From the NCBI GenBank assembly GCA_024679065.1, contig JAGIQG010000009.1:107570001-107634000 (forward strand): 64,000 bases of DNA. Reading direction: 5' to 3'. Numbering within the stretch: position 1 is the stretch's first letter; the number at the start of each line of letters is the position of its first letter. The notes beneath the pieces are model-generated. The model was given only the letters and a program-made list of their open reading frames with translations, made no database searches and was not told the origin of the DNA. The position numbers and the translations under genes were made by a program. Below are positions 7,958 through 55,602 of the stretch, piece after piece. The DNA comes from Sphyrna mokarran. Taxonomy: Eukaryota.

Positions 7958-8160
7958 TTAACTTTTTACCATGAGACGCCTGCCAGCTGTGGTATCTTCT
8001 TCACGCTCTGCAGTGAGAAGCTTAGGAGAACTTCGAAACTCGCGGCAATATACGAGAGATATCGTTATCATGATTAACACAGCAAACACTGCAAGCCTCA
8101 CTCCCAACGTAATCAGTTGCCTTTGCAGCGAACGTCCGGTTCCGTCGTGCTGCTCCCGGT
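7958..8160 (-). CDS. Gene A stalk/TM/cytoplasmic terminal exon (TM Arg)
   Basis: ttctccacag|AC CGG... encodes DREQHDGTGRSLQRQLITLGVRLAVFAVLIMITISLVYCREFRSSPKLLTAEREEDTTAGRRLMVKS*. It is 203 nt long and colinear with the gene B terminal exon. Confidence 0.88.
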
Positions 8161-11100
8161 CTGTGGAGAATGAACAGTCAAATTGTTTTATTCATTTCAC
8201 TCGATCAGCTTATCGAAATATGTTATCAATTGTGTTACCAATTTCTTGTGCACTGATTGCACCGGAGATTCTTCATAACGTATTGTGTTCAAAGTTAGAT
8301 GCCTCGGAAAAGTATAATTTAGGACGCCAGACACCCCGAGCATACTCTCTTCCGTCTTCTTCCGTTGGGAGAAAAATTTTAAAAAGTCTAAGATCACATA
8401 CAGCAGGGTCAAGAACAGCTTCTTCCATGTTGCCATCGGACTTTCGACCGGAAACAAAAAATGCTGGAAAATCTCAGCAGGTCAACGTTTTGAGTCAGAA
8501 CTGAAAGGAGAGCAATGAAAATCAGACGAGATGTCTACTATGAGGATAGGGGAGAGGGGGGGGGGAGGTGGTGGTGTTTGGGGGCTGTAGTTGGATAGAC
8601 CAAATGTAAATGATGATGACAAAGCCTGAGAAAGTGCTAAAAGTGTTCCTTACTGATCGAAATGTGTGAATGAGAACAGAGTTAAAGAGATCTCCCAGTC
8701 TGCGTTTGGTGCCTTCGATGTACGCTCTGGGCTAGCCTAAACTGGAGAGTCAAACATGGACTGGGTCACTGCTTATAGAACATATTCGATCCATCTGCAA
8801 GCAGGCTCCAGACCTTCCTGTCGCTTGCTATTTCAGCACACCACCCTGCTCTCCCGTCCACTTGTCCATCCTCGGCCTTTTGCAATATTCTCGTGAACCC
8901 CAACTTAAACTGGAGGAACAGCAGCTCATCTTCTGATTGGGCATTTTATTACCTTCTGGACTGAGTATTGAGTTCAACAACTTCAAGGGATGAACTTGCT
9001 CCCTCACCTCCACCCCCATTTCCATTCTTTTTACTTTTCGCCTCATTCACCGATTTTAATCAACTTTCATTCGTATTTCTATTTTTCAATTCTCAAATCC
9101 GCTCCCCATCTTATCTCCAATTCCTCCCTCCTCTCCCACTTCCGTCTCCGCCTTCAGGGCAACTCCCATATTCCTCAAGCATTCTTTGACAATCTGTGCC
9201 TAGTTCTGCCATTCATACTTTTCGATTATTTGATGGACACTTTTCGCATATTTCTCAGCCTTCGTTATCACCAGTTGCATTTGCTCTATCCAACTAACCC
9301 CTCACCTCTTGCTCCCTACATGCCACCCACCCACCCACCCCCCCTCCCACCACCCTGGCACCTTCATAGTATAAGTCTCTCCTGACCTTTTTTTCTTCTC
9401 AGCTCTGAGGGATGGTCATCCAGACTCGAAACCACCTCGCTCGCTCCGGAATTGGGCGGGTGAGGCTCGCAGAATTAAATTCTCCGTTGGCCTCGGGCGG
9501 GACTTTACGAGCCTTGCCAAACTTGATCATAAAATCCCGGCCAGGCTCTATCCTTCTTTCACAGACGCTGTCAGACCGACTGAGATTTTTTTTGCATTTT
9601 CTATTTTGTTTCAAGTTCCAGCAACCGCAGCATTTTGCCTTTAGACTTTTGAATGGACTTACCTAATATTAAGTTAATCGTTCGCTACCTAGCTATAGCC
9701 CTACATTCTGCACCCTCTTCTTTCCTTCCCTCCATGTACTATATGAACGACATGCTATGTCTCTATTCCGTGCAAGAGCCAATACTATTCATTAAACACC
9801 AACATAAGTGATAATACAAATCATGTCAAAACAAATTTTGCGCCAGTGATTCACTGAGTCCTTCCACTTTGTCCTGAACCCTGATGTTAACTTCCCCTCA
9901 TGGCTCAGTCATTCACTTAGTCCTTTAAGCTGTTATCTGATTCAGAGGATTGAGCAATGTTTTATTTCGTCAAAGGGTCTGGGAATTACGAGGCATATAA
10001 GATTATTATAGCTTTGTGTCTGTAGTTTTAAATGAATTGGGTCATATGTCTTGCTCTGCAGTCTGTCCGCGAGTCAGCTTCACTGGTTTCATTCTTACAG
10101 ATCAAAGGAAGGCTTCGATTATAAAATTGAATAACAAATGCATTTCTTTTGGGGAAAATTACATCAGTGCTGGAGCTTACAATGAGCACAGTCCGAAATT
10201 TCCACTCGTCCAGAAAGGCGCTGAAGCACCGAGTTGTAAACAGTTGTGCTGTAAATTGTCTATTTACCACTAAGATGAAAGGAAGCTGCCATTCAGAATT
10301 CACAAGTTAGTGTTTCTACCCAGGGAGGAAGCTAATGCATTCCACGCTTTCACGGGGAAGAGGGCAGAAAAGGTCAATTCTGACACCAGTTGAAAGGCTT
10401 CCGTACAAATTATTGAATATCACAGGCAGACAGCAGTTCTGTGCGGCCAGCAACCAAAAACATTGCTGGGCTTTATGAGGTATTCCAGATAAATGACGGA
10501 AGAGGTGGTCAGTGATTGAATAGGCCCTTCCTCTCGTCTGGTCACTCGTAGCTGCTATTTTAGGCCAGCCCATTGGAAACAGGTAGCGATCGTGAACTGT
10601 TTTATATTTATGAGTCATGAGGAAGGTTTGCATTAACACTGCAATGAAGTTACTGTGAAATTCCCTGAGTCGCCACATCCGACTCCTGTTCGGGTCAATG
10701 CGCCTGATTAGTGTCTTTCAAAATGTGGGAGAAAACCAGAGCATCCGGCGAAAACCCTCGCGGGTACGGGGAGAACGTGCAACGTCCACACAGACAGTGG
10801 CTCAAGCCAGGAATTGAACCCGGGATCTCGCCTATCGTGCCACCAAAAATCCTGTAATTCATTGTAGAGTGTGATGAAGACAAAAAGAAAAACATCAGTT
10901 TCTGACATTTAAAACGTAAGGAGCACACAAAAAGTGTTCAGTCAGTATTGTTTCGTTACAGTCAAAGTTTTAAAACATGAGCTGGTGACCTGTTGACCTT
11001 TTGGCAATTCAGCGGAAATGCGGAATTGTTCCTAAGGATTGTCAGCCTCCCCGCGGATTGCAGCAGGGAATACCTTCAGAGTTATGGCTTGGAATAGGAG

Positions 11101-14100
11101 GAAGCAATTAATATCCTTCGCACCTTTCGTTTTTCAATGGGATCATGGCAGATATGTGACCGTGTCTTTGCTGGGTATAGCTGATGTGAACTTAAATGTA
11201 CCAAAGTTGTGTGTCTGCTTATCCATATGTATCTAACGTATGGGGAAGGCGACTTCAGTTGACTGGCCGTTCGATGTGTGTGTGTGTGTGTGCGTGTGTG
11301 TGTGCGTGTGTTATTCCACGTGCGCTGGAATAACGCCAAATGCCTTGGGGTCGACTCTGCTTCCAGCTGAAGAGGGTTTGTGACCTGCCTCCTCTCTCTC
11401 CTCCTTAGCAAAAATTCGAGGTCCGCCATGATTGTTGACTTTGGAAAAATGGAAGATGCTACTTGATTAGAAAGAATCAGCAATAGCGAATATAAACACG
11501 TGCCTATATTCCTATGGTGGAAGAGATGTATGTGTACACATACTTGTGTGTCAGCATCAAGTCAAGATTACACCTTTAGCCACAATTGGTTTTAAATAAA
11601 ACAGGAATACTCGTGAACGTACGTCAGACTGAACAATAATAGGAACAACAGGCATTTCTAACATTTTTCACACGGATTCAACCAAGGAAACATAAAGATG
11701 TTAAAAAGAATGATCAAATACGTCGGTTTATTGAAGGGGAGTTAGAGATAAGAGTGGGAGAGAGGAGTGGGAGGGACAGAAATCTAGAACTGAGCGACCT
11801 TGCAGTACAAGGCTTCCAATAGTGAAAGGATGTAAATCGGGAGGCCAGTTTTGCCGAATGATAAATACAATGGGGTGAATAATATAAGGGCCGATGACAT
11901 CTTTCTCCCCGCGCACGACATGGGCCGGAAGCACGTCAACCAGCCCCACATCCATAAAGCATTGTGGAGCTATTTAGCGAGGTCTAAGTGGTACACCCGT
12001 CTCACATTGGATCTGTTCAATCCAATTGGAAGGTGTGAATGGCAACTGCCTGATCCGAAGGTGAAGAGAGGAATCTAAAGCTATTCTATCCTGAGAAATA
12101 TTCCTGGGGTCTTGGGGGTAGAGGTTTTTGGGAGTATCCGGGGCTATCAGGTGGAATAAGGTGGGTTTAGGAGGAGAGAGATGATAGGAAGAGTGGGGCT
12201 AGTGGAGGGACGGCATTCAGCCTAAGGAGCCCTATTTCCCTTTACTCGTTTCAGATTAAAAATCGGGTTTTCTGCCATTATGCCCGAGGCAAACGCATTA
12301 TATCCAGAAATAAATCAAATTGTCAGACACATTGAAATACGATTCGTCGATTTGCACATTTAACGTATGTTCATGGCTAATATAAAAACAATGTTAGAAT
12401 AGATACTTTGATGGAGTACATCAGAAGCAAATTATTTAGCTATATAATTAAGTAAATGAATGTTCATTTCCAAACGTTCTTCATAACTAGTATCTCAGAA
12501 TTGAAGGATCATAGATTCCCTATAATGCATTAGGAGTTCATTCAGCCCATTGCGCTTGCATCGACCACAATCCCACCCAAGCCCTATCCACATGACCTCA
12601 TGTGTTTGCCCTAGCTATTCCCTTGACACTAAGGGGCAAGTTAGTATGGCCAATCCATCTAATGCGCACATCTTCTTGACTGTGGGAGGAAACCAGAGCA
12701 CCCTGAAGAAACCTACCCAGATACAGGGAGAATGTACAATCTCCACACTGACAGCACGGTGACACAGTAGTTTGCACAGTTGCCTCACAACGCCAGGGAC
12801 CCGCTTTCAATTCCGGTGTCGTGTCACTAACGGTGTGGAGCTTGCATATTTTCCCCATGTCTGTGTAGGTTTTCTCCGGGTGTTCCAGCTTCCTCCCACA
12901 GTCGAAAGATGTGTAGGTTGGGTGGATTGGCCATGTTAAATTAACTCTTTGTATCAGGCGGATTAGTTAGGGTAAATGCATGGAATGACAGGAATAGAGC
13001 TTGGGTGGGATTGTGGCTGGTGCAGATTTGATGGGCTGAATTGCCTCCTTCTGCATTATAGTGATTCTATAGAATTCTATGGGATAATTGTAGACTGGAT
13101 AGTATAGGAACAATTAATTTGATTTATTTTTGAAAAGAATAATTGTAAAGAAAGGCTGATGGTAGCACATAGAAACATACCTTTAACAGTTACTTGTGTG
13201 CCCATTCCAGTTCCGCCACCACCTAGCGGTAAAAACACTTCACAATAATATATGCCGGAATCATTCTGATTTGCCTTTATGACTGTAATTTGGGTGGTGT
13301 TTAAATATTGTCCATGTTTCCTCAAAACCCGACCAAAAAATCCTTCAGATGTGTTCATAATAGCACTCTTTTCATAACCTGGTGCTTGCTTATACCAGTT
13401 GATTCCAAATACTGATAACACTTCAGGATCATTAAATGTACAAGAGATTTGAAACTCTTCCCCTTCTGTTACTTCGATAATCTGTGGGTTTTGAGTTACT
13501 TTGATGTCGGCAATAGCAACAGCTGTAAAACAGAAGTTCCAGTTATTTTGTTAGACAAACTTATTCTACACTCCAAACTCCTGTCCTGACCACTGGCAAA
13601 GAATTCAAATCTGGCTTATTACAAATTCAAACAAGGAATCCTCACTCACATCCTTCAACATTCAGAGGCTACATGACCATCGAATTTCCTTCCATTGACC
13701 ATGCGAATTCTCGGAGACATTCAAATTCCTGTCTAAGTGACATATTGTACATTGCCATCCTTTGGCCCCCGCTGAGCCAGTTTGCCAAGAACGTTAAACT
13801 GTTCACAGAATGACGGCATTATTTTGCCAGTTCAGTAAGGAGCTTGTAAGATCATTGCAGGAACATTATCAGATAAATCCTGTAAGGAGGGGTCAATGTT
13901 ATGAAGGTAGCACATCGGAGCACATACAAGGTGAATAACAATAGCAGAAAGTTATAATTAGCGCTAAGCGATCCAAAGCAAGCTAATCAGCTCAAATCTC
14001 TACAGTGCTTCCCAATCGGCAGCTTAATGGTGCCTGCATAAACATCTCCCATGCAGTTTGGTTGAAATTTCAGCCCTTCAGTCTATAACGAGTTTGAAAG

Positions 14101-16074
14101 ATTTCTAACCATCTCGGCCTGAAACTGGGAAGTGGAGGATCAATCTAAGTTTCCTTTTCAGAGCTTCACCTCACAGATGCTAGTCTTCAGGTAATGCGAA
14201 TCATAGAATCATACAATCCCTACAATGCAGAAAGAAAGAGGCCATGTGGCCCATCGAGTCCAGGCTGACCACAATCGCACCAAGCCCCTATCCCCATAAC
14301 CACACTTATTTACCCTGCTAACTCCTAGACATTAAAAATCAATTTAACATTACCATTCAACCTAACCCACACACCTTCGGACTGTGGAAGGAAAGCAGAG
14401 TACTCGGAGCAAACCCACACAGACACGGGGAGAACGTGCAGATTCCACGCAGACGGAAATCGAATCCAGGTCCCTGGATTGGTGAGGCAACAGTGCTAAT
14501 CATTGTGCCACCATGCCACCCTCATTTCAGGATCTGATAATATCAGGGCTGTTGTACTGATGGTTTATGCTCCCTAACTAACAGTCAGGCTGCGCTAGTC
14601 CAGCTGCAAAACTGTCAGACAACCAAAACGGTAGAATTTGCTTACCTAAAACTGGTAGGATGCATGAAGATCCAGTTAATGTTGCCCAGAAATTCTAATC
14701 TGAACAAGCAGCAAATCGATAGAAGGTTTCGAAAATGTTATCAAGGGATGGTTTAATGACCTGTTCACCAGTGTTGGTTTGGATTTCATCAGGACCTGTT
14801 GGGTCCCAATATCCCTGAGGCTTTTGTCCAGCAATAGTCAAAAGCAAATTCCCAGTGATGAGGTGAAAGAAGTTGCTCTTGATATTCAATCAGCATTTTT
14901 TTTAGTTATTTATTTGTGTCATAAGTAGGCTTATATTAACACTACAAGGGAGTTATGTGAACGTTCTCTGGAAACTTTGCTGGTATTCAGTCAACATTTG
15001 ACCAACTGTGACATCGGACCGCCCTGAAAACAAAACTATTGAAACCTGTAAAAGCACGTCATTTGTTGGTGTCATGTCTATGTCGAAACAGGATGGACCT
15101 AGTTGTGGAATGCCAACCATTTGAATCCAGAACAAGCAGCAAGATTTACTCAATGCTATGCTGTGGGCCCAACTTTCATTTGCTTTATCACTGCATCGTA
15201 AGGCTATAAAAGGAAATATACGCAGATGACTATTCAATGCTCAGCCCCACTTGCCACTCTCAGATTTTGCAGTTTTCTGTGTCCATAGTCAGCAAGACTT
15301 GGACAATGTTCAGGTTTGAGCGAGAAATGATAGGCAATATTTGTTCTGAACAAGTGTTTGCCAATTACTGCTTTCTCCTTCCCTACCCCTTAGCATTCAA
15401 CAGCATTATCACCCTGAAGTACCCACCAAAATATTCTGCTGGTTATCGTTAAGCAGAAATTTAACTGGAGGAGCTGCTTGAATGCTGTTCTGTGGCACAT
15501 TTCTCAGTTCCTGACTCCAGCCTGTTCAGCATCTGAAATGTGCAAATCAGCAGTGTGATAGAACATTCCCTACCTGTCTAGTTGACTGAAACATCAGGTA
15601 TTTTCCATTATCTTGGAAACAGCAACCCGTCAGATCAGCAGCCTATTTATCACCTCTAACATTGGCTCCATCCACCTTTGTTGCACACTACAAGATCACT
15701 ACAGCCAACTATCCAAGCCTCCTCATACTGCACTGTCCAAATTCCCAACCTTAACCACCTCAGAAGAAAACGGCAACAGGCAAATAGCAACTCCAGCACT
15801 TTCATATCATCCTGATTTAGAGCAATATTGCTGTTCCGTCACAACGAAGCGACTAAATTCTGGAACTTCCTCCCATCAGCATTGTGGGTGTAGTTTCTCC
15901 ACAAAGGTTGGGATGGATAAAGGTGGCTGCTCACCACCAAGTTCTCAAGGTGTGCAATAAATGCTGACCTTGCCGGTGATATCCACATCCTTAACCAAAT
16001 GTAAAGAAATGTGACAAATAAGTTCATCACTTACCAGCAATCAACAGTACACCAATTATAGTATCTGCAAACAT
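7958..16074 (-). CDS. NCR3-like: Gene A: NKp30/NCR3-like single-IgV activating-type receptor; coding exons 16035-16074, 13181-13522, 7958-8160; 194 aa
   Basis: Leader MFADTIIGVLLIA, then a V exon, then a TM/tail exon. All junctions are GT-AG and phase 1, and the 585-nt total is in frame. The TM helix contains an Arg (LGVRLAVFAV; human NKp30 has LLLRAGFYAV). Confidence 0.88.
8690..9450 (+). mobile_element. Penelope-like element fragment (GIY-YIG C-terminus and 3' region)
   Basis: aaactggaggaacagcagctcatcttc...ggactgagtattgagttcaacaacttc encodes KLEEQQLIF..GLSIEFNNF. Confidence 0.75.
12507..13082. mobile_element. Two back-to-back HE1-like SINEs (minus ~12507-12752, plus ~12753-13082)
   Basis: The V domain and tail occur in opposite orientations. 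Confidence 0.8.
13181..13522 (-). CDS. NCR3-like: Gene A VJ-type IgV exon
   Basis: Boundaries ttttacag| and AAA G|gtatgt. Encodes IKVTQNP..EGEEFQISC..INWYKQ..FFGRV..DSGIYYCEV..GGGGTGMGTQVTVK, with canonical Cys/Trp/Cys and a J-like GxGT motif in the same exon. Confidence 0.93.
14198..14522 (-). mobile_element. HE1-like V-SINE
   Basis: Full head, V domain and tail on the minus strand. Confidence 0.8.
15540..16010 (+). mobile_element. LINE 3' end sharing its tail with the second SINE family (also ~33440-33810 and ~59600-59790, minus)
   Basis: ctggaacttcctccc...ctcaccaccaagttctcaagg...caataaatgctgaccttgcc. Confidence 0.55.
16035..16074 (-). CDS. Gene A leader (signal peptide) exon
   Basis: ATG TTT GCA GAT ACT ATA ATT GGT GTG-like hydrophobic run ending GCT G|gtaagt (MFADTIIGVLLIA), phase 1. 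The acceptor ctcttctttgccttcacag lies 17 nt before the ATG. Confidence 0.85.
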
Positions 16075-29725: not shown

Positions 29726-29740
29726 TGGGGTGGGGGGTGC

Positions 29741-39800: not shown

Positions 39801-42800
39801 CATGGATGGAGAGTCTAGAAATAACACCAGTAGGCAGTCGCCTCCCCACATCTCACTCTTACCTCGGCCCCGCCCTATGTAAGGAGCAAAAGGATGGATA
39901 GAGGCAAGATTGGACCTCTCAGGGACAGAGGAGGGGATCTATGCTTAGAGCCTGAGGGAATGGGGGAGATCCTGAATGAATACTTTGTGTCGGTATTCAT
40001 GCAGGAGACTGGCCAGATGTCTGTTGCTGATTTTGACAAAGTTGAGGATCTGTTGAGGGAAATAAAGATTACGAGGAAAGAGGTGTTGGGGCTGTTAGGC
40101 AGCTTAAAGACATATAAAGCTCCGGGACCTGATGGCATTTACCCCAGGCTGCTAAGGGAGTTGAGGGAAGACCTAGCTGGGCCTCTGACGCAAATTTTTG
40201 TCTCTTCCTTGGACACAGGTGAGGTCCCAGAGGACTGGAGGATAGCAAACGTAGCACCGTTGTTTAAAAAAGGTCAGAGGGATCACCCAGGGAACTATAG
40301 GCCGGTGAGCTTGACTTCAGTTATAGGTAAGCTAATGGAGAGGATCCTCAGAGACAGGATGTATGAGCATCTGGAGCGCTGCGATCTGATCAGGGATATG
40401 CAGCATGGCTTCGTCAAGGGGAAGTCTTGTCTTACAAATCTAGTGGAATTTTTTGAAGAAGGGACAAAAACAGTTGATGAAGGACATGCTGTTGATGTCG
40501 TCTACATGGATTTCAGTAAGGCGTTTGACAAGGTTCCTCATGGTAGACTGATAGAGAAGATGAAGGCGCATGGGATACAGGCCCAGCTATGTAGATGGGT
40601 CGAGAACTGGCTCGGGAGGAGGAGACAGAGGGTAGTAGTGGAAGGCTCTTTTTCTGACTGGAGGCCTGTCACTAGTGGAGTGCCACAAGGCTCAGTACTA
40701 GGTCCTCTTCTATTTGTGGTCTACATAAACGACTTGGAAGTAGGGGTAGGTGGTGAGATCAGCAAATTTGCTGATGACACCAAGATGCTGGGATTGGCGG
40801 GTACAGAAGAGCAGTGTCAGGCAATACAACAGGACATAGACAGGTTGGTAGACTGGGCAGATAGATGGCAAATGGAATTTAATCCGGATAAATGCGAGGG
40901 GATGCATTTTGGCCGGAAAAATGTAGAAGAGAGTTATAGGATAAAAGGTAAAACTATTCGGAGTATAGAGACGCAGAGAGACTTGGGGGTGCAGGTTCAC
41001 AAGTCTCTGAAGGTGTCTTTACAGGTGGAGAAGGTGCTAAAGAAAGCGTATAGTATGTTAGCTTTCATAGAAAAGGGTATAGAATACAAGAGTAGGAGTT
41101 TGATGTTGCAGTTGTATAGAACTTTGGTTAGGCCTCACTTGGCATACTGCGTCCAGTTCTGGTCGCCGTACTATCGGAAGGATGTGGAGTCCTTGGAGAG
41201 AGTGCAGAGGAGGTTTACCAGGATGCTGCCTGGTATGGAAGGACTGTCTTATGAGGAACGATTGAATAGACTGGGGTTGTTTTCCCTTGAAAGACGTCGG
41301 CTTAGAGAGGATCTAATAGAGGTGCATAAGATTATAAGAGGTATAGATAGAGTAAATGGTGGTAAACTTTTTCCACCTTCAGAAATGAATAGGACGAGGG
41401 GTCATGGCCTTAGGGTGAGGGGGGCTACGTATAAGACGAATATTAGAGAGCAGTTTTTCACACAAAGGGTAGTGGGGGTGTGGAATGCACTGCCGAGTAA
41501 GGTGGTGGGAGCAGGCACGCTAAGACTGTTTAAGGGTCTCTTGGACAGCCACATGAGCGGTATGCAGATAGAGGGATATAGTAGGACTGTTTAACTATGA
41601 CTTTTTTTTTCACAGGTAATTCGGTCCAACTTGACCAACAAGGAGCATGCATTCGGCAGGTGGTGCGAGGACAGCTCTTGGATGTTGATTCATGGGTTGC
41701 CTGGTGCTTCATGTCGTAAATGAGTGCTTTATCTGGACCACCTGAAGGGCACCATGACAGCTACAGCGATAGTCACTGAGCTGTGCAGACACTTGGAATT
41801 GGGCCGGTGTCTGCGGGAGTTTGCGCATTCTCCCTGTGGTTGCGTGGGTTTTCTCCGGGCGCTCTGGTTTCCTCCCACATCCCAAAAATTCGCTCTTAGG
41901 CTGATTGGGAAACAAATTGACCCTATATTGAGATTCTTCCATATTAGGAATAACCTAAAATTAGAATAAGAAAATGGAATTGTTACTATAAAGTTATGAC
42001 GGCGGCGCGGGCTCATTGGGCCGAAGGGCCTGTTTCCCGTGCTGTGTTGCTCTTTGACTTCTTTGACTATAGAAAGCATTGGGTTAGCACAACCATTCGG
42101 TAACAGACGGTGGACTAATTTCGCCAGCTATGCAGCTCGATGATAAGTTGCACATCTCTCTCAATGTTCCTTACCTACTGCAATCTATTTGCCGTAACCA
42201 AAGCCAGAGCTCTTAAGAAACACGAACTTTAGATGTTATTTGTCTCGCTCCATACTAATCATTTATACTATCATGTTTCCCTGAATCTAGAATCTTATTA
42301 CTTAACCTAGCTTTAGAGTAATGGCGATTTATCACAGTACAAATCAAGAGTGCGAATCAAAACATGGTACATACCTCTTTTACTGTTTGGGCTCCATTTC
42401 TTTTACCTATAAAGTGTATTAAATAGATTAGATTTTAAAACTGGAACATAATTCGCAATCCTAGTATGAAAGCCAATAGTAAATTAAAATTTTCAGACCG
42501 AAATATATTTCTTCATTATCATAGAATACCAAGAGTGCAGAAGGAGACCATTCGGCCCATCAAGTCTGCACGGACCACAATCCCATCCGCCCCATTCCCG
42601 TAGCCCCATGCATTTACTCTGCGGGTCGCCCTGGCACTAAGGGGCAAATTAGCATGGCCAATCAACCTAACCCGCAAATCTTCGGACTGTGGGAGCAAAC
42701 CAGAATATCCGGAGGAAACTCACACAGACGCGGTAAGAATGAATAAACTCCACACAGACAGTGACTCAAGCCATGAAGTGAACTCGGGTCCCTGGCGCTG

Positions 42801-48800: not shown

Positions 48801-51800
48801 GACTTGGTACTGCATTGACCTGAACAGGCGCTGGACTGTGACCAATAGGAGAGTTTCACAGTAACTTCAATATAGTTTTGATGCAAGCCTTACTTGTGAC
48901 TAATAAACTAACTAAAAATTCATTTTGGAAAATAAGAATATTCACGGAAATGCTGGTATTGCTGCAACTTTCAATCATGCTGATTATTGCAGAGACACTG
49001 TAGGTGTACAACAATGTAAACCATAGGTCAGCCACGTTGTTCTTCAGACATATAGTCATTCATGCCTTGCAGGAAAGAAATGGGTATAAAGTTCTCATTC
49101 CACGTCGTAAAATAGAATGAATTCAGAATAATTACCTGGTGGTCCACTGCATTGCCAAATATAAATTATTTTAGTTAGGATGACAGCGAGTACCACAAAA
49201 ACCAGCACCGAGAAAATAAGCAGATATATGTTCCATTGGCTTGGAGGTGTTGTCACATCAGAATCAACATGACCTTTAGAAAGAAAACAACAGTAAAACA
49301 TGCCTTTCTTTCCATCTGCTACAGTGTTTTTGATGGGGTTGGGGGGAGTTATTCTGGACTTCGTACTTCAGCTGAGAAACCGCAGTTTCAGCCTCTCGAT
49401 GCGCACAGCCCCAAGCTAATGAGCAGAGAAGTCAAAATAATGTGTCAACCACAATCCCTATTTGTGTATGGGTGATGACCATTGCTGGTCGTCCATTTTG
49501 TTTGAAAACAAAGTAACTTAAGATGAGAGATAAGAGCATTGATGCAGAATGGCAGGCAGATGGTGAGCAGATAAAGCCTTTAGAACATATCAGTTCTGGG
49601 AACACAAGATTTCTTCAGAAATTGTTTGATTCATTGTAGGGGGATGGTGGAGTGAGCAGTTGTACAACATTCTACACAACTGTCTCCCCTCCCCCCACCC
49701 ACCTCCCCAACCGCCCACACATTCCTCTCTCGTATTTCTGGGCATACAACTAAATTATTTCTTTTCCATTTGCTGCAGCTTTAATTCTTATTGCTATATT
49801 TTGCCATCCCTGAGGATATCTCGAGTTCTGACTCAGCAGCCAGCTGGACACAATGAATATCCCAAATATAAAAAGGTTGAGATGTCTTTAGCTTTGTTGC
49901 TACAGCAAATGACGATCTATGTTCTTGCTGCCTTGTTTTAATTTCTGCTTTTGGAGAGGAAAGGGTGTTCCAATACTATGTTTGCCTATTTCACCAATAC
50001 AGCATTCTAATATCAGACATGTAGAAAGAGAATGATCTAGTGAATCTCACCTAACTAGAATCCTCCTTTCTATTCTGACTTGTTTCGTTCAAATTCATGG
50101 AATGATGATTCCTAATAGCGAGCAGTTATACTGTCGTCAATAATGCAAAATAAGGATCTCCAAATCAAGTTTACTTTTCTGTAACTTCTTTATATTAGGT
50201 TATTCTGGAAATGAAGTTCGTACAGTTTCACCCATTCCACTGTAATTGGTCGTGGTTAACAAGGGGATCAGCTTTATGGTAAGCAAGCGGAATTTAAAGT
50301 TGGATCCACAATTCAATGATTAGCTATTACTGTTCCTATTTCGCTATCTTGTGTTTATGCAACAGCAGGTGGGTATTTTTGTCGAATGCATCATGAACCT
50401 ACAGCTTTAATAACTATGCCTACCTACATGGCTATTAATCCTGAAACCCAGTTATTGTTCTGGGGACCAGGGTTCGAATCCCACCACAGCAGGTGGTGGA
50501 GTTGAATTCGATAAAAAAAAAATTAAGAATGTACTGATGACCATGAAACCATTGTCTATTGTTGAAAAACCCCATCTGGTTCATTAATATTCTTTAGGAA
50601 AGGAAGTCTGCCGTCCTTGCCTGTTTTGGCCAATATGTGACTCTAGAGCAACAGCAATGTGGTAAACTCTCAACTTCCCTCTGAAATGGCCGAACAAGCC
50701 ATTCTGTTATATCAACGTTTCAACAAGGCAGTTCACCACCTTGGTAGTAAAGTAGTTTATGGTAGTATATGGTAGTAAAAAAAAACTTGTAAAGTGCAGT
50801 ATTCGATAGGGCAACTCACTTGAAGTTGAAAGTTCCCAGGGATGGTTGAGATGCATCCCTGAATTGTCGAGAGGGCAGGAATCATGGGGGTACAGGAAAT
50901 GTATGAATTAAAATTAAGTTAGTGTCATGGATTGCAGTCTGCTCTCATGGGCTGCTGCGATTCACGGAGGCAGAGCAACACCATCTTCTCAATGGCAACT
51001 AGAGATGGGCAATAACTTCTGGCCTAGTCAAAGACACCCATGTCCCACGAATGAATTTTTAAAAAGTGTTGGTGTAACAAGTAGACTTATATTAGCACTG
51101 CAATAAAGTTGTTATGAAAATCCTCTATGAGGGTATATGTACAGAAATCGATGGAATTACCAGGGCGTGTTGAGAAAGTGGTTTGCAAGGCATACAGCAA
51201 CCAAGGCTTTATGAACAGAAGCACTGAATGCAGAAGTAAGGATGCTATGGCGATTTTAAAAAAAAACTTAAACGCCAGTTAGGCTTCAACTGGGGCATTG
51301 TTCCCAATTCTGGGTGCCAAACTTTCCAAAACGATGTTAAGGCTTTGGGGAGTATGCAGAAACGATTTACAAAAATATTTCCAGATTTGAAAGACTTCAA
51401 TATGTGGATAGATTGGCGAACCCGCTAGGCTTGTTTCTCCTCGAAGGACAGAGATTAAAAAGAGATTTCATAGAGGCATTCGCGATCATGACAGTCTGGA
51501 TAGACGAGTTGGAGTCAAATTGCTCTCTGATATAATAGTGTCGAGAAGGAGATGAGATGGATTTCAGGTGATCCGCCAACAAGGATATGACGAAACTAAA
51601 GCATTCATCTCACGTACTGAGTGGTTAGGACCTGGAATCCACTGGTTCAGAGTGAGTAGGAGGCAGCTAGTTCTGAGTTTTAAAAAAGAAGTAAATAAGA
51701 ATCTAACGTTCAAAATAGAATGTGATACGGTTTCAGAAAAGTGTCAGGGATTGGAGCACATTGTGTTGCTTTAGAGGTGAGCTTGTACAACAAGCATGCA

Positions 51801-54800
51801 TAGACACGGGGGCTGAAACCATTGCATGGTGTTGTGACTGTGCTTTATACCTGGCCCAGAATTCCCCTCCACTATTGTAGAAGCATAGTGAACCCGGACA
51901 GAGTGAAACCCCAAGGGCTGCATCCGATCCCGTCAGCATTCAATTTGTGTGGGCAAAACACAGAGTGGGGGACTTCCAATCTGCGGGTGGATTAATTATC
52001 CCTAGTTCCCATTTACCTGTCTATTTGTAAGGAATGTGAAGCTACAGGTGCAACACAAACTCACCATTTACTGTGACATTTGTTCCTTCTCCGGTCCCGT
52101 TTCCGCCGATCACAAGCTCCACATCACAGTAATACTTCCCTGTGTCGTTCAGGTTCACATTGGTTATCGATATGGATGCGGTTCTGAATTCGTAGAATGA
52201 AGATGCATGAGAATTCTGAACACGTCCGATATATTCTGTGCAGTTGTTGCAGACTTTACGGGTTCGGGAATCTTTATACCAAGTGACTGAACCAACGGCT
52301 CCGTTTCTTGAATCGGTTGCATTCTCACTGAAGTTACAATACAGATGGAAGGTGCCGCCTTCTTTTACGCTAATAGAGTTCGGTGTTTGCTTGACTGTGA
52401 CTCTAGAGTCAGTAGCTCCTGTAAACATAAATTTATATCTTCATTAACATCCAGGCCACTTCACATTGTTGGTTTTGAGTTACAGAAACATTGGGCTCTG
52501 AAATGGTTATCACAGCTAACAGCAACAAGCAGTTCAGTTACACAACTGGTCATTTTAATGCTTCAGTTTTCTGAAGAAGGGTCATTGATTTATGACATGG
52601 TGACACAGTGGCCTCACACTGCTAGGCACCCGGGTTCTATTCCCGGCTTGGGTCACAGTCTGTGCGGAGACCGCACCTTCTCCCTGCCCCTGCGTGGGTT
52701 TCCTCAGTGTGCTCCGGTTTCCTCCCACAATCTGGAAAGATGTGCTGGTTAGGGTGCATTGGCAATTTTGAATTACTTCATTGCAGTGTTAATTTAAGAC
52801 TACTTTGAAACTAATAAGTAAAATTAACACTTAAGGTTAAAAGATCCTGGCCGCCATTCTTTGGCCGTTCACACTTTCGGGATTCTCCGGCCGATTTCTT
52901 TCTGGCATAGGTGACATCAATGAGATATATTTTTCATTCGTTCATAGGACATAGTCATGGCTGGCTGGGTCCACATTTATTATCCATCCCAAGTAGCCCG
53001 AGGGTAGTTGAGAGTCAACTGCACTGCACTGCTATGCTCTGAAATCCCACGAAGGGCAGACCAGGTAAGAACCGGCAGATTTGCTTTTTGTTTTGTGGTG
53101 TTTTTTTGTGTGGTGGTTTTGGTGTGGTTTTTTGGTTTTTGTTTGGTTTTGTGGTTTGAATTTGGAATTCGGACCAGGGTCCCCACATTAGCTGAGTTTC
53201 TGGATTCATAGCCTAGAGAAAATACCGATAGGCCATCGCTTCCCAATTGATAGCGGTGGCACCAGTGAATCCCGCCGCTGGCAAAAAAAGCGCCACTACC
53301 CGCCTGCCAGAATCACATGGCTTGGAGGGCGGACAATCTCTCTCCTGTCTCCCTGTTTCTCGCCAACCTTTGCCCGACCTGAGTGTACACTGGGTACTCC
53401 CTGAATTCCGATTAATATATATTTTCCAGCTTTATTTCTGTTATGCAGTCTGTTGTTTGAGACTTTTCTTTCTACCGCTCAAACTAATCCACAAATAAAG
53501 AGGGGCAATGAGACTGAAGCTGGCCTTCCTTTAATGGGAATTGACTTTAGTCAGTTTTAACTGGGCTGTCGGCAGGTGCTGCAGAACAACTGAAGCCTAT
53601 ACTTGCAAATATTTCATTGGCTCCACTATATTGCCGAAAGCAAATCAGAAGGGTGAATATTACGCTTTATTGCAAATGTTATCTTACACTAGCTGGGAGT
53701 GTTAAATAACAAACTAGGCGCGTATAAAACAAACTTAAATTATAATTCAAATTGTAGGAAAATCTGTTCTTTTTGAGCAAGCGGTCAAGCGAACTCCAGG
53801 TTTTCACTCCAGCCAGCGAGTCGAAAATGTTAGGTCTTAGTGATTACCTGTCTTTTTTTTAAAGGCAGGCTCATCTTATGCATATAAAGACAAATTGTAA
53901 TGTCCATACAATCACAAAGATAGAAACAGGATCAATAATTCTTATCATTCTCTACCTTTGCTTGCTAGACTGTAACTCTAGAGTCGGTAACTCCGGTAAA
54001 CATGCAATAGTCGCGCCACGCTACATTGTTGCTCCGAGCTTTACATGCAAGGAAGAGTTGCAGCTCCTTCTCTGCACAATCGTCAAAGGGCGACAAGGAA
54101 TAAGAAACCTGTGACATTGCATGAATAAATAACCTTGATTCACAGGGCACAATTTTCTAAAGTTGTGGAGCATAAAAAAATTGAAAGCATTGTGAGGATA
54201 GCGGTGGAGTTCCAAATGGCATATGGACAGTTTGCTGGAACCGGAGGTTAAATGGCAGATTTAATTTAACGCAGAGAATTGTGAAGTGATTCGTTTTGGT
54301 AGGAAAAAAACACGAAGAGACAGGAGAAAAATAAAGGGTCCAAGTCTGTAGGAAAAGAGCCACCCCGATGTGTATGGAGAGGAGGTGGCTGTTAATGAAA
54401 TATACAGCATTTATTAATGGGGCACAGAGGTTATGTAAAATAATATTTTGGTCATCGCATAGGAACGTAGAAAATAGGGGCAGGAGTGTGCACTATAGCC
54501 TTTCCAGCCTTTCATTATATTAATTGCTGATCATCCAACTCAGTGCCCTATTCCCGCCTCTCTTCTACATTTAGCCTTAAGAGCTACATCTAATTCCTTT
54601 TTGGAAATATTAATGTTTTGCATTAAACTGCCTTCTGCGCTAACGAAGTCCACGGGATCACCAGCCTCTGAATGAAGAACTTTCCCCTCATCGCACCCTT
54701 AAACTGTTTACCGTGTATCCCTTAGGCTGTGACCCCTGGTTCTGGATACCACATTATCGGGAATATCCCTTCCTGCATTTACCCTGTTAGAATATTATCG

Positions 54801-55602
54801 GTATTTATAAGATCACCCCACATTTTTCTAATATCCATCTAAACTCTTCTGTGATCCGAATCTCACCCCACACGCCATTCTGGCATCCCAAAAATGATTT
54901 GGATAGATTGAAGAAATTACGAAAAAGATTCACGAGAATGGTTCCACGGATGAAGGGTTTCAGCTACTTGCCCGCAATTCCTATGTGTGTGCGTGTGTGT
55001 CTATGTCTGTCTGTGAGCATGCATGTGTGTGTGTTTATGTGTATGTCTGTGTGTGTGTATATGTGCGTTTCAGTGTATGTGCCCATATGAGTGTATATGT
55101 GTTTGAGTGTATGGATGNNNNNNNNNNNNNNNNNNNNNNNNNNNNNNNNNNNNNNNNNNNNNNNNNNNNNNNNNNNNNNNNNNNNNNNNNNNNNNNNNNN
55201 NNNNNNNNNNNNNNNNNNNNNNNNNNNNNNNNNNNNNNNNNNNNNNNCGTGCATGCATACCTGTGCTTGCGGATGTGTGTGCGTGTGTGCAATATGTTTA
55301 TGCATATACATTTATATATCTATATGAAATACGTATCTGAATAATACAGATGATATATTTACTGATGTTTGTATCGATGTCTCTGCGTGAAATATTTAAA
55401 TGTTTGTTTCTAATATAAGTTGATGTATAATATACGTATATATGGCTGCATAAATCTCGATAACAAGTACCTGTGTGGATGTGTAACAGTGTCTGTGCGT
55501 GTGTGCATACATATGTTTATTCATAGACACATGAGAGAGCCCGGGCGCAGATTACTTACCAGAGAGCAACAGATACGACCAAACGATTCTATTGCATAGC
55601 AT
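36580..55602 (-). CDS. NCR3-like: Gene C: NKp30/NCR3-like single-IgV inhibitory-type receptor with 2 ITIM + 2 ITSM; coding exons 55560-55602, 52065-52418, 49136-49273, 42375-42406, 36580-36834; 273 aa
   Basis: All five exons are GT-AG with compatible intron phases (1,1,1,0), giving 822 nt in frame. The V domain closely resembles human NKp30 as recalled (AVGSVTWYKD vs AIGSVTWFRD; GNGTGEGTNVTV vs GVGTGNGTRLVV). Confidence 0.82.
36846..37322 (-). mobile_element. CR1 3' fragment abutting the gene C terminal-exon acceptor
   Basis: ORF 37028-37276 (LGLFSLERRRLR); the tail is cctgttcctgtgctgttcttctcattgttctt. Confidence 0.85.
38708..38830 (+). pseudogene. 5S rRNA pseudogene (full length, diverged)
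   Basis: GTCTATAGCCATACCAGTCTGAA...AAGCTAAGCAG...GTTAGTACTTGGATGGGTGAC...TGGGAATACC...GCTTTT aligns end to end with vertebrate 5S rRNA, with many substitutions. Confidence 0.85.
39877..42066 (+). mobile_element. CR1 LINE, 5'-truncated and young (open 566-aa ORF2 segment with RT), including 3'UTR and tail
   Basis: ORF 39894-41594 has KAPGPDGI, NYRPVSLTS, QHGF, YMDFSKAFDKV, SGVPQGSVLGP and KFADDTK. The 3' tail is gggccgaagggcctgtt...ctttgacttctttgact. Confidence 0.95.
42375..42406 (-). CDS. Gene C 32-nt cytoplasmic mini-exon
   Basis: cactttatag|GT AAA AGA AAT GGA GCC CAA ACA GTA AAA GAG|gtatgt. Phase 1->0 is exactly what is needed to join the TM exon to the ITIM exon. Confidence 0.65.
43345..44025 (+). 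mobile_element. Penelope-like element with inverted pseudo-LTR segment and hammerhead-like core
   Basis: 43345-43497 is an inverted copy of ~43644-43797. CTGACGA...GAAA core at 43895-43919. Confidence 0.8.
44040..45745 (-). mobile_element. CR1 LINE internal fragment (endonuclease to RT, degraded)
   Basis: ORF fragments IKENPKAIYTYVRNKR, KSSGPDGIYPR and HGFVKDKSCLTNL. Confidence 0.88.
45719..45818. repeat. Four copies of a ~26-bp tandem unit at a CR1 5' junction
   Basis: gttcacctaccttattcc...tgct(a) repeated four times. Confidence 0.8.
45940..46405 (+). mobile_element. CR1 LINE 3' end
   Basis: RRNFFSQRVVNLWN motif and ggtcttat tail. Confidence 0.8.
46430..47150 (+). mobile_element. Old degraded CR1 RT fragment
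   Basis: Remnants such as aaattgcccgatgacc (KFADD-like) and ttgttagactgcacttagaa (LVRPHLE-like). Confidence 0.6.
47162..48145 (-). mobile_element. CR1 LINE 3' fragment
   Basis: KFADDTK and LVRPQLEYCVQFWS motifs, with a (cttatgtt)n tail. Confidence 0.9.
49136..49273 (-). CDS. Gene C stalk/TM exon
   Basis: ttttctttctaaag|GT CAT ... CCA G|gtaatt. Encodes HVDSDVTTPPSQWNIYLLIFSVLVFVVLAVILTKIIYIWQCSGPP, phase 1-1. Confidence 0.85.
52065..52418 (-). CDS. NCR3-like: Gene C VJ-type IgV exon
   Basis: Boundaries atgtttacag| and AAT G|gtgagt. Encodes VTVKQTPNSISVKEGGTFHLYC..GSVTWYKD..YIGRV..ASSFYEFRTASISI..DTGKYYCDVELVIGGNGTGEGTNVTVN. Confidence 0.95.
53959..54003 (-). pseudogene. Short dead duplicate of the start of the gene C V exon
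   Basis: atgtttacCG GAGTTACCGACTCTAGAGTTACAGTCTAG compared with the real exon start atgtttacAG GAGCTACTGACTCTAGAGTCACAGTCAAG. Confidence 0.7.
54982..55330. repeat. (TG)n-rich repeat containing an assembly gap (N at 55118-55247)
   Basis: 130 N flanked by TG repeats, inside the leader-V intron of gene C. Confidence 0.95.
55560..55602 (-). CDS. Gene C leader exon
   Basis: gccATG CTA TGC ... CTC TCT G|gtaagt (MLCNRIVWSYLLLS), phase 1. The acceptor tttgttcacag lies 13 nt upstream of the ATG. Confidence 0.85.

What the first reader, a model, noticed from the sequence alone, without database searches (positions are those of the whole stretch)
7958..55602. Paired activating/inhibitory NKp30 (NCR3)-like receptor cluster in a cartilaginous fish
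Seen: three tandem minus-strand genes, each with a leader, one germline-joined VJ IgV exon and a TM exon. Genes A and B have an Arg or Lys near the start of the TM helix and tails with no ITIM. Gene C has an unrelated TM exon and four inhibitory tyrosine motifs. Established: human NKp30 is a single gene that activates through a TM Arg pairing with CD3zeta/FcRgamma and binds B7H6. Multigene NCR3 families are known in sharks and Xenopus, and paired receptors such as KIR, SIRP and CD300 combine these two architectures. Inference: this is a paired-receptor system built on the NKp30 fold, possibly MHC-linked. I cannot confirm from here whether these particular members have been described.
Basis: partly seen in the sequence, partly recalled or inferred. 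Interest (0 to 1): 0.85.

Follow-up and report, generated by a model that had tools for sequence, protein, structure and literature searches.

The report
Shark NKp30-like receptor gene cluster
Three neighbouring shark or ray genes encode NKp30-like immune receptors, two built to activate cells and one built to inhibit them; this family is already known and annotated in other sharks.

Summary
The window has exactly three minus-strand VJ-type IgV exons. Each has a short leader exon and a TM exon, and every junction has AG/GT sites and matching Ig-type phase.

They end in paralogous 203-nt TM exons with Arg or Lys and no ITIM.
It has a different TM exon and a last exon with LVYAKL, TVYERV, VVYAPL and TVYGRV.

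Two corrections: TM-to-ITIM splicing is out of frame unless a 32-nt mini-exon (42406-42375) is used. The N gap lies in the leader-V intron of gene C, not in coding sequence.

- **Family:** V1 and V2 match human NKp30 best by sequence, and V1 also by fold. V2 is 69% identical to a deposited nurse-shark NCR3. V3 looks as much like Ig/TCR V domains.
- **Relatives:** horn-shark and bamboo-shark proteins carry V1-type V, TM and ITIM tail in one chain.
- **"Paired":** only loosely. The ectodomains are 32-37% identical.
- **RNA:** no run was listed.
- **MHC linkage:** not testable here.

The scan noted the same kind of cluster elsewhere in this genome. Verdict: a new member of a known kind.

The parts
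55560..55602 (-). Gene C leader exon L1 (MLCNRIVWSYLLLS plus 1 base), donor GTAAGT
   Evidence: Read from DNA. By eye, the stretch resembles the N-terminus of P0004, MLWNRFIWLLLMFP, with 6 of 14 residues identical. It lies across the N gap from V1.
55118..55247 (.). Assembly gap (130 N) inside the L1-V1 intron of gene C
   Evidence: Both flanks are TG/CA-rich simple sequence. The gap is not in coding sequence. I did not fill it or look it up.
52065..52418 (-). Gene C V1 exon, VJ-type IgV, 354 nt, phase 1 at both ends
   Evidence: Pfam V-set 1.2e-12. Human NKp30 is the best PDB match, E 2.6e-11, against 4e-05 for the next. AF2 pLDDT is 91, and Foldseek ranks 1-4 are NKp30. 61% identical to P0001.
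49136..49273 (-). Gene C stalk and TM exon TM1 (..QWNIYLLIFSVLVFVVLAVILTKIIY..), donor GTAATT, phase 1
   Evidence: 66% identical over 44 residues to the TM part of P0001.
42375..42406 (-). Gene C cytoplasmic mini-exon, 32 nt (KRNGAQTVKE), phase 1 to 0. Predicted, not shown by RNA.
   Evidence: One of 8 candidates with good splice signals among 709 open AG..GT candidates in the right phase. It matches the linker KRTGTQVVSK of P0001 at 5 of 10 residues. The pattern KR.G.Q.V occurs once in 127,996 six-frame positions.
36580..36834 (-). Gene C last coding exon: LVYAKL, TVYERV, VVYAPL, TVYGRV, then stop
   Evidence: tblastn of the P0001 and P0004 tails gives E 1.7e-9 and 4.7e-10. A minus-strand AATAAA lies at 36485-36490.
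29294..29339 (-). Gene B leader exon L2 (MNPADLLWASMLLFF plus 1 base), donor GTAAGT
   Evidence: 11 of 14 residues identical to the N-terminus of P0005.
28561..28914 (-). Gene B V2 exon, VJ-type IgV, 354 nt
   Evidence: Pfam V-set 3.1e-16. NKp30 E 6.6e-11 in PDB. 69% identical to P0077, nurse-shark NCR3 QTT61904.1.
27296..27498 (-). Gene B TM and tail exon TM2 (Lys in ..MGVKLAVFAVV..), 203 nt, includes the stop
   Evidence: P0151 maps here at E 8e-12 and P0077 at E 1e-6. No ITIM/ITSM motif.
16035..16074 (-). Gene A leader exon L3 (MFADTIIGVLLIA plus 1 base), donor GTAAGT
   Evidence: 10 of 13 residues identical to the N-terminus of P0043, and 9 of 13 to P0053.
13181..13522 (-). Gene A V3 exon, VJ-type IgV, 342 nt
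   Evidence: 50-57% identical to P0043, P0061, P0060, P0053, P0082 and P0037. It falls in the elasmobranch clade with V1 and V2. It is not specifically NKp30-like.
7958..8160 (-). Gene A TM and tail exon TM3 (Arg in ..LGVRLAVFAVL..), 203 nt, includes the stop, followed directly by AATAAA
   Evidence: 72% nucleotide identity over 204 nt with TM2 and its 3' flank. P0061 and P0151 map here.

Best explanation
The window holds three intact-looking genes of the elasmobranch NCR3 (NKp30)-like family. These are type I membrane receptors with one germline-joined VJ IgV domain.

**Genes A and B: activating type (inferred).** Each has three exons: leader, V, and TM plus tail. An Arg (A) or Lys (B) sits in the outer part of the TM helix, and the short tail has no ITIM. 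By analogy with mammalian NKp30, they would signal by pairing the basic TM residue with an acidic TM residue of an ITAM adaptor such as CD3zeta, FcRgamma or DAP12. This step is inferred.

**Gene C: inhibitory type (inferred).** It has five exons: leader, V, an uncharged TM, a 32-nt mini-exon, and a tail exon. Its tail carries two ITIM-plus-ITSM pairs. After tyrosine phosphorylation these would recruit SH2 phosphatases such as SHP-1 or SHP-2. This step is also inferred.

**Shown versus inferred.** The exon anatomy, the family similarity and the recurrence of both architectures in other sharks and rays are shown. Transcription, ligands and signalling partners are inferred.

The three ectodomains belong to three old, divergent V lineages. 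They probably see different ligands and do not form a matched pair.
For: - **Anatomy.** All 11 exons are open, with AG/GT boundaries and consistent phases. The window has only three V exons and only one non-repeat ITIM tail exon.
- **Family, by sequence.** NKp30 chains are the best PDB matches for V1: E 2.6e-11, against 4e-05 for the next hit. For V2 they take ranks 2-5, E 6.6e-11.
- **Family, by fold.** For the V1 model, Foldseek ranks 1-4 are NKp30 (E 1e-12, TM about 0.8). Rank 5 has E 1.3e-9 and TM 0.68.
- **Database relatives.** An exhaustive search of 1.84 billion representatives gave 242 hits at E 1e-3 or better. Of 30 proteins whose names I looked up, 12 are called NCR3 or NCR3-like. 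These include horse/donkey, hamster, possum and Xenopus NCR3 and nurse-shark NCR3.
- **Tree.** V1, V2 and V3 sit in one starred clade of 21 rows (98/94). The other 18 rows are all elasmobranch proteins.
- **Gene C architecture.** P0001 (Heterodontus, named NCR3-like) and P0004 (Chiloscyllium) each map to V1, TM1 and the ITIM exon.
- **Gene B architecture.** P0077 and P0151 map to both V2 and TM2.
- **Gene A architecture.** P0061 joins a V3-type V domain to a TM3-like TM.
- **TM basic residue.** It lies within 2 residues of the mammalian NCR3 Arg in a TM alignment.
Against: - No RNA evidence: no sequencing run was listed, so no junction has been seen in transcripts.
- The mini-exon is a prediction. 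A match of 5 or more of 10 residues to the homologous linker occurs at 15 places in the six-frame window. Its strength therefore comes from the combination of splice signals, phase and position.
- V3 is not specifically NKp30-like. None of the 60 best PDB sequence matches shown and none of the 50 Foldseek rows shown is NKp30.
- The tree has only one non-NCR3 outgroup (tapasin-related-like). It leaves the relation of the elasmobranch clade to mammalian NCR3 unresolved.
- The homologues are mostly automatic RefSeq models.
- Continuity across the N gap is unproven.
Confidence: 0.78

Rival explanations
1. In this genome the ITIM exon is not part of the V1 gene's product. Gene C would end soon after TM1 by read-through into the intron, where a stop follows 13 codons later. 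The ITIM exon would be an orphan relic separated by retroelement insertions.
For: - The ITIM exon lies 12.3 kb from TM1, with reverse-transcriptase sequences in between.
- A direct TM1-to-ITIM junction is out of frame.
- The mini-exon that restores the frame is only predicted.
- No RNA run was listed.
Against: - The ITIM exon is fully open, with a pyrimidine-rich acceptor and a nearby AATAAA.
- Homologues in two sharks carry V1-type V, TM1-type TM and this tail in one protein.
- The mini-exon has the right phase, size and linker motif.
- No other V exon in the window could own the tail.
Confidence: 0.12
2. The genes are not NCR3 orthologues. They would belong to an elasmobranch-specific expansion of VJ-type IgSF receptors that is only distantly related to NKp30. 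V3 in particular would be as close to Ig/TCR V domains, and the name NCR3-like would be an annotation label, not a lineage.
For: - V3's best PDB matches are antibody light-chain and scFv V domains.
- The 50 listed Foldseek rows for V3 are antibody, VNAR and TCR V domains.
- The tree leaves the elasmobranch clade, mammalian NCR3 and the amphibian groups in an open polytomy.
- 12 of the 30 relatives looked up are 'uncharacterized' and 5 carry other names.
Against: - V1 and V2 match NKp30 clearly best.
- The V3-lineage profile scores NKp30 as the best single-domain chain, 48.6 bits.
- V3 groups with the V1 lineage at 99/82.
- Gene A shares its TM exon type with gene B, whose V is 69% identical to a deposited nurse-shark NCR3.
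- Unchecked notes of the scan place AIF1 and DDAH2, which are MHC class III genes, near by.
Confidence: 0.2
3. One or more of the three genes is an unexpressed pseudogene in a birth-and-death multigene family.
For: - The region is repeat-rich, and the scan notes many paralogous clusters.
- A 45-nt decoy copy of the V1 exon start sits in the leader intron.
- There is no RNA evidence.
Against: - No exon has a stop or frameshift, and all splice sites are canonical.
- The hallmark Cys, Trp and Cys residues and the GxGT motif are kept.
Confidence: 0.1

Closest known systems
Human/mammalian NKp30 (NCR3)
   Same: - A single VJ-type IgV ectodomain.
- V1 and V2 are 37% identical to horse/donkey NCR3.
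- NKp30 is their best solved-structure match.
- Genes A and B carry a basic residue in the outer part of the TM, like the Arg in ..LLLRAGFYA.. of P0085.
   Different: - Mammals have one gene (recalled). Here there are three in 48 kb, and more near by according to unchecked scan notes.
- Gene C has no charged outer TM residue and has an ITIM/ITSM tail.
- The basic residue is offset by 2 positions in the alignment.
- V3 is not specifically NKp30-like.
Nurse-shark NCR3 family (GenBank QTT61904.1; MT914154-914161 cited in PMC12227049; Kinlein et al. 2021, not readable here)
   Same: - V2 is 69% identical to QTT61904.1 (P0077), and its TM maps to TM2.
- Both are multigene families of divergent subtypes. 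The figure of eight subtypes and the MHC linkage are recalled from the abstract, not seen.
   Different: - Different species.
- I could not read whether ITIM-tailed subtypes or V1-type and V3-type subtypes were described.
RefSeq ITIM-tailed NCR3-like models of other elasmobranchs: XP_067865303 Heterodontus (P0001), XP_043533738 Chiloscyllium (P0004), XP_041068169 Carcharodon (P0053)
   Same: - P0001 and P0004 have the same V lineage, TM type and tail as gene C. V identity is 61% and 59%, and the TM is 66% identical to that of P0001.
- The tail exon matches at E about 1e-9.
- The C-terminal xVYxxVRV/L ending is conserved.
   Different: - Gene C keeps all four tyrosine motifs. P0001 keeps one and P0004 two.
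- P0053 has a V3-type V with an ITIM tail, whereas the V3 gene here has the Arg-TM exon.
Paired activating/inhibitory receptor families (KIR, SIRP, CD300, PILR); properties recalled
   Same: - One gene cluster holds members with a charged TM and short tail alongside a member with an ITIM tail.
- Within the V1 and V3 lineages of other species, both tail types occur.
   Different: - Ectodomains in this window are only 32-37% identical. Classical pairs are near-identical.
- The closest activating/inhibitory pair I saw elsewhere is 63% identical: P0039 and P0024, both Hemitrygon.
Inhibitory IgSF receptors with ITIM plus ITSM tails (PD-1, SIRPalpha, PECAM-1); recalled
   Same: The tail alternates the ITIM pattern ([ILV]xYxx[ILV]) with the ITSM pattern (TxYxx[VI]) twice.
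   Different: - The V domain is NKp30-like, not CD28/PD-1-like.
- No sequence relation of the tail to those proteins was tested.

Membership tests
NCR3/NKp30 family | A single ectodomain encoded by one germline-joined VJ exon, with the canonical Cys, Trp and Cys and a J-like GxGT motif | tested here: met
   All three V exons meet it. The invariant columns are C, W, C and G in a 56-row alignment.
NCR3/NKp30 family | The V domain is closer to NKp30 than to other V families among solved structures, by sequence | tested here: inconclusive
   Met for V1 (E 2.6e-11 against 4e-05 for the next hit) and for V2 (E 6.6e-11). Not met for V3 as a single sequence: no NKp30 among the 60 shown. With a 7-sequence V3-lineage profile, NKp30 is the best single-domain chain at 48.6 bits, but the margin over Ig V domains is small.
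NCR3/NKp30 family | The predicted fold is closest to NKp30 | tested here: inconclusive
   Met for V1: Foldseek ranks 1-4 are NKp30, TM about 0.8. Not met for V3: none of the 50 listed rows is NKp30. V2 was not modelled.
NCR3/NKp30 family | A basic residue in the outer TM for pairing with an ITAM adaptor, and a short tail | tested here: inconclusive
   Met in gene A (Arg) and gene B (Lys), within 2 positions of the mammalian Arg. Not met in gene C, which has an uncharged outer TM and an ITIM tail. Other proteins named NCR3 or NCR3-like also have tyrosine-motif tails, for example Xenopus P0057 and newt P0036.
NCR3/NKp30 family | The nearest database relatives are NCR3 proteins, including cloned ones | tested here: met
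   12 of the 30 names looked up are NCR3 or NCR3-like. V2 is 69% identical to nurse-shark NCR3 QTT61904.1.
NCR3/NKp30 family | Monophyly with tetrapod NCR3 to the exclusion of CD28/PD-1, NITR, SIRP, TCR and Ig V domains | tested here: inconclusive
   The tree of 89 V rows had only a tapasin-related-like outgroup. The elasmobranch clade and mammalian NCR3 lie in an open polytomy. No outgroup sequences of the other families were available as stored proteins.
NCR3/NKp30 family | Location in the MHC (class III) region | not testable with these tools
   The window holds no other gene, only reverse-transcriptase remnants. The only leads are unchecked scan notes of AIF1 and DDAH2 near by and passages in papers calling NCR3 MHC-linked in sharks.
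NCR3/NKp30 family | Binds B7H6 | not testable with these tools
   Needs protein binding assays.
Paired activating/inhibitory receptor system | Charged-TM, short-tail members and ITIM-tail members lie in one cluster | tested here: met
   Genes A and B against gene C, within 48 kb.
Paired activating/inhibitory receptor system | The activating and inhibitory members share a near-identical ectodomain | tested here: not met
   V1 to V2 is 36%, V1 to V3 is 37%, and V2 to V3 is 32%. The three belong to three separate starred sublineages.
ITIM/ITSM inhibitory receptors | A cytoplasmic [SIVL]xYxx[IVL] and/or TxYxx[VI] motif after an uncharged TM | tested here: met
   There are four motifs in the last exon. 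The last one is conserved at the C-terminus of P0001, P0004, P0033, P0039 and P0052. Phosphatase binding was not tested.

The most novel reading that the evidence does not exclude
NKp30-like V lineages of sharks and rays have repeatedly swapped between two signalling cassettes. One is an Arg/Lys TM exon; the other is an uncharged TM followed by a mini-exon and an ITIM/ITSM tail. On the V-domain tree, the 20 typed proteins need 6 changes of tail type, and starred branches force at least 4. That would make the shark NCR3-like cluster, if it is MHC-linked as reported, a modular activating/inhibitory NK-type receptor system. It would have arisen independently of KIR, Ly49 and NITR. Gene C would be an inhibitory NKp30 carrying a double ITIM-ITSM, checkpoint-like tail. 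This counts as new only if the primary shark NCR3 paper, which I could not read, did not already describe it.
Probability: 0.3. Interest if true: 0.6.

Novelty: new member of a known kind. Interest (0 to 1): 0.4.

Why it matters
NKp30 is usually cited as the one natural-killer receptor conserved from sharks to humans, and in mammals it is activating only. This locus shows what the family looks like in a cartilaginous fish. Several divergent V lineages sit side by side, and each is combined with either an adaptor-pairing TM exon or an ITIM/ITSM tail.

That gives concrete gene models for three questions:
- whether inhibitory NKp30-type receptors work in sharks;
- which ligands they see, for example B7H6-like molecules;
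- how activating and inhibitory forms arise by exon exchange.

The V3 lineage is a non-rearranging VJ domain that resembles Ig/TCR V domains as much as NKp30. It bears on ideas about the origin of antigen-receptor V domains in the proto-MHC.

The family, its multigene nature in sharks and ITIM-tailed models in other species are already in the databases. This is therefore careful annotation, not a discovery of a new kind.

Tried and rejected
**Steps that led nowhere**
- **Direct TM1-to-ITIM splice.** Rejected: it joins phase 1 to phase 0 and would shift the frame.
- **Alternative donor.** A GTGGAA 33 nt further into the intron, in phase 0, would keep the frame without the mini-exon. It is not excluded. 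It is a weak donor, and I saw no homologue with such a linker.
- **Mini-exon search by the motif [TSE]Q[VAI][VA].** It found nothing. A motif score over open AG..GT candidates brought up only retroelement pieces. Ranking by splice signals then gave 8 of 709 candidates, one of which carries the linker motif.
- **Word-based protein searches.** V1 gave nothing. P0004 found only itself. P0077 found two close relatives. None showed whether nurse-shark ITIM forms are deposited.
- **RNA evidence.** The look-up of sequencing runs listed no run, so read laying had no run id and was not called.
- **Further exons in the window.** tblastn with all 160-odd stored relatives found no further V, TM or tail exon. 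The one exception was a weak plus-strand hit at 19889-19999, E 0.002.
- **A second TM exon for V3 or V1** (the splice-switch idea from a neighbouring note). I found none.

**Literature**
- Not held, so not read: Kinlein 2021 (by DOI and PMC8273117), Flajnik 2012 (PMC3709836) and Ohta & Flajnik 2015 (PMC4594805). What I say of them is recalled or taken from reference lists.
- I ran seven searches. Among the papers I opened, none had a passage on ITIM-bearing shark NKp30. These searches do not cover most subscription papers.
- Passages only were seen of PMC12227049, PMC10751288, PMC11599192, PMC12272517, PMC10450919, PMC4536121, PMC6514059 and PMC5371597.
- No supplements were opened. The supplementary MHC maps of PMC10751288 and the supplements of Kinlein 2021 may show where NCR3 genes lie and which tails they have.

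Full report
**What is there.**
- The window is 64 kb with one N run at 55118-55247.
- On the minus strand there are three V-set exons (Pfam V-set 1.2e-12, 3.1e-16 and 9e-06).
- tblastn of each V exon against the window hits these three places and nothing else of note.
- The same holds for tblastn with all stored relatives, apart from one weak plus-strand hit at 19889-19999.
- Each V exon is a complete germline-joined VJ domain. It has the two Cys, the Trp, a DxGxYYC motif and a J-like GxGT..V.V motif. It starts after an AG with two bases of a split codon and ends one base into a codon before GT.

- Gene B: L2 29339-29294, V2 28914-28561, TM2 27498-27296.
- Gene C: L1 55602-55560, V1 52418-52065, TM1 49273-49136, mini-exon 42406-42375, tail exon 36834-36580.

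The three leaders are 13-15 codons plus one base, and each is followed by GTAAGT. They resemble the N-termini of the nearest relatives:
- L2 to P0005, 11 of 14 identical;
- L3 to P0043, 10 of 13 identical;
- L1 to P0004, 6 of 14 identical by eye.

TM2 and TM3 are both 203 nt. They are 50% identical in protein and 72% identical over 204 nt of DNA including the 3' flank. No intron similarity remains, so the duplication is old. They carry Lys (..MGVKLAVFAVV..) and Arg (..LGVRLAVFAVL..). Neither tail has an ITIM/ITSM pattern. AATAAA follows the gene A stop directly.

**Gene C and the frame problem.**
- TM1 is unrelated to TM2 and TM3. Its only basic residue is a Lys at the cytoplasmic end.
- The tail exon encodes LVYAKL, TVYERV, VVYAPL and TVYGRV, then a stop. 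It is the only non-repeat open segment in the window with four such motifs. Five other segments have 3-4 motifs; all lie in two short regions and read as repeated SIYLSI-type units.
- TM1 ends in phase 1 and the tail exon begins in phase 0, so a direct junction would shift the frame.
- The relatives have a short linker between TM and tail, for example ..DKRTGTQVVSK.. in P0001.
- A motif search for it failed.
- I listed all 709 open AG..GT candidates of the right phase between the two exons. Keeping those with a pyrimidine-rich acceptor and a good donor left 8. One of these, 42406-42375 (32 nt), encodes KRNGAQTVKE.
- As a control, 5 or more of 10 identities to the P0001 linker occur at 15 of about 128,000 six-frame positions. 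That match alone is weak. However, KR.G.Q.V occurs only here, and the candidate was picked on splice signals first.
- I take the mini-exon as likely (about 0.75) but not shown.
- A weak in-frame alternative donor 33 nt past the TM1 donor cannot be excluded.

**The gap.** The N run lies in the L1-V1 intron, 313 nt from L1 and 2.7 kb from V1, between TG/CA-rich simple sequence. No frame crosses it. That L1 belongs to V1 rests on phase, on the shared leader style and on likeness to the P0004 leader. I saw no better leader between the gap and V1. A hidden exon or a misjoin in the gap cannot be excluded.

**Family.**
- *Sequence against PDB, V1.* The four NKp30 sequences lead at E 2.6e-11 to 3.7e-11; the next hit is 4e-05.
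- *Sequence against PDB, V2.* NKp30 takes ranks 2-5, from E 6.6e-11. Only a 478-residue multi-V construct ranks higher.
- *Sequence against PDB, V3.* All 60 rows shown are antibody-type V domains; none is NKp30.
- *V3-lineage profile.* With 7 sequences, NKp30 reaches rank 12 (48.6 bits). It is the best single-domain chain, and the 11 rows above it are constructs of 254 residues or more. The lead over Ig V domains is small.
- *Fold, V1.* The model has pLDDT 91, and Foldseek ranks 1-4 are NKp30 (E 1.2e-12 to 1.4e-11, TM 0.79-0.82). Rank 5 has E 1.3e-9 and TM 0.68.
- *Fold, V3.* The model has pLDDT 91.5, and none of the 50 listed rows is NKp30.

**Relatives.**
- phmmer of V1 against 1.84 billion representatives gave 242 proteins at E 1e-3 or better, 50 at 1e-10 or better and 6 at 1e-30 or better.
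- I looked up the names of 30:
  - 12 are NCR3 or NCR3-like. They come from horse/donkey, hamster, possum, Xenopus, newt and several sharks and rays, and include nurse-shark NCR3 QTT61904.1.
  - 12 are uncharacterized.
  - 5 carry other automatic names: pIgR-like (2), IgSF11-like, turtle-like and tapasin-related-like.
  - 1 has no name.
- P0001 (Heterodontus NCR3-like, 61% identical to V1) and P0004 (Chiloscyllium, 59%) each contain a V1-type V, a TM1-type TM and a tail ending in the conserved tyrosine motif.
- Both map to V1, TM1 and the tail exon. For P0001 the values are V E 1e-43, TM 66% identity and tail E 1.7e-9. For P0004 the tail gives E 4.7e-10. This is the main evidence that the ITIM exon belongs to gene C.
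- P0077 (nurse shark, 69% to V2) and P0151 (sawshark) map to both V2 and TM2.
- P0061 (cloudy catshark NCR3-like) joins a V3-type V to a TM3-like TM.

**Tree.** The tree used careful IQ-TREE on 89 V rows and 119 columns, with few columns for so many rows.
- *Rows.* Rows were all single-V hits of 340 residues or less, plus the two domains of P0151. I dropped eight near-identical isoforms and both domains of P0005.
- *Placement.* V1, V2 and V3 fall in one starred clade of 21 rows (98/94). The other 18 rows are all from elasmobranchs.
- *Sublineages.*
  - V2 lineage: 4 rows, all with a Lys/Arg TM.
  - V3 lineage: 7 rows, of which 4 have an ITIM tail, 2 a Lys/Arg TM and 1 is truncated.
  - V1 lineage: 10 rows, of which 6 have an ITIM tail and 4 a Lys/Arg TM.
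- *Tail type.* It needs 6 changes on the tree, and starred branches force at least 4. I took tail types from a script and corrected three by eye. P0001 and P0004 are flagged for the cytoplasmic-end Lys. P0061 has a weakly hydrophobic TM.
- *Limits.* The link from this clade to mammalian NCR3 (99/99) is an open polytomy. The PDB rankings stand in for it.

**Paired or not.** V1-V2, V1-V3 and V2-V3 are 36%, 37% and 32% identical. That is far from the near-identity of classical pairs, so the window holds both signalling types but no matched pair. Closer pairs exist elsewhere:
- Hemitrygon P0039 (ITIM) and P0024 (Lys TM) are 63% identical.
- Hypanus P0026 (Lys TM) and P0033 (ITIM) are neighbouring loci, at 41%.

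**Mechanism (inferred).**
- A and B: the Arg or Lys lies in the outer part of the TM, within two positions of the mammalian NCR3 Arg in an alignment. This fits pairing with an acidic TM residue of an ITAM adaptor.
- C: the two ITIM-plus-ITSM pairs fit recruitment of SH2 phosphatases after phosphorylation.
- None of this was or could be tested here.

**Transcription, linkage, literature.**
- No sequencing run was listed for the tail exon.
- The window has no other gene, only reverse-transcriptase remnants. MHC linkage is therefore untestable here.
- Unchecked notes of the scan report many NKp30-like clusters within about 300 kb, further ones 10.7 Mb away, and AIF1 and DDAH2 near by.
- Passages in PMC12227049 and PMC10751288 call NCR3/NKp30 a non-rearranging, MHC-linked VJ gene in sharks and list nurse-shark NCR3 genes MT914154-914161.
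- The primary papers (Kinlein 2021, Flajnik 2012, Ohta & Flajnik 2015) are not held, and supplements were not opened. I therefore cannot say whether ITIM-tailed shark NCR3 forms are already in print.

**Verdict.**
- The anatomy is real.
- The NKp30-like assignment is sound for V1 and V2 and looser for V3.
- The inhibitory member is supported by homologues but not by RNA.
- "Paired" holds only in the loose sense.
- This is a new member of a known, already annotated kind.

Noticed in passing
window 53959-54003: A 45-nt copy (87% identical) of the acceptor and first codons of the V1 exon (52384-52428) sits in the L1-V1 intron. In the exon's frame it reads into a stop. It may be a relic of a partial duplication or a decoy acceptor.
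   Followed up: partly
window 39894-41594 (+); also 44043-48331 (-), 56362-56715 (-), 1375-2383 (-): A 566-aa open reverse-transcriptase ORF (Pfam RVT_1, 2.4e-33) lies in the intron between the mini-exon and the ITIM exon. Several shorter retroelement-like ORFs lie in the TM1 to mini-exon intron and in both flanks. They account for the long introns of gene C.
   Followed up: partly
window 12508-13070, 14208-14513, 38830-39139, 42518-42805, 52604-52783 and others: An interspersed repeat of about 250-300 nt (64-80% identity between copies, both orientations) is scattered through the introns of genes A and C. It was not classified.
   Followed up: no
window 5640-5988 (-) and 28219-28455 (+): Short regions whose translations read as repeated units such as SIYLSI. 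They imitate clusters of ITIM motifs and are a trap for motif-based scans.
   Followed up: yes
window 13181-13522 (V3) and relatives P0043, P0053, P0060, P0061, P0082, P0037: The V3 lineage is a non-rearranging VJ domain. Its best solved matches by sequence and fold are antibody light-chain, VNAR and TCR V domains, not NKp30. This may interest work on the origin of antigen-receptor V domains.
   Followed up: partly
P0005/P0151 (Pristiophorus japonicus) against window 28561-29339: The sawshark relative of gene B has two V domains in tandem before the Lys TM. Here the L2-V2 intron is only 379 nt and holds no second V exon. Domain number therefore varies within this lineage.
   Followed up: partly
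window 19889-19999 (+): A weak plus-strand tblastn hit to the V domain of P0019 (E 0.002, 36% over 39 residues). It may be a decayed V fragment or chance.
   Followed up: no
P0026 and P0033 (Hypanus sabinus LOC132394821 and LOC132394822): Neighbouring loci in the Atlantic stingray encode a Lys-TM member and an ITIM-tail member of the V1 lineage, 41% identical in V. The mixed layout seen here recurs in a ray.
   Followed up: partly
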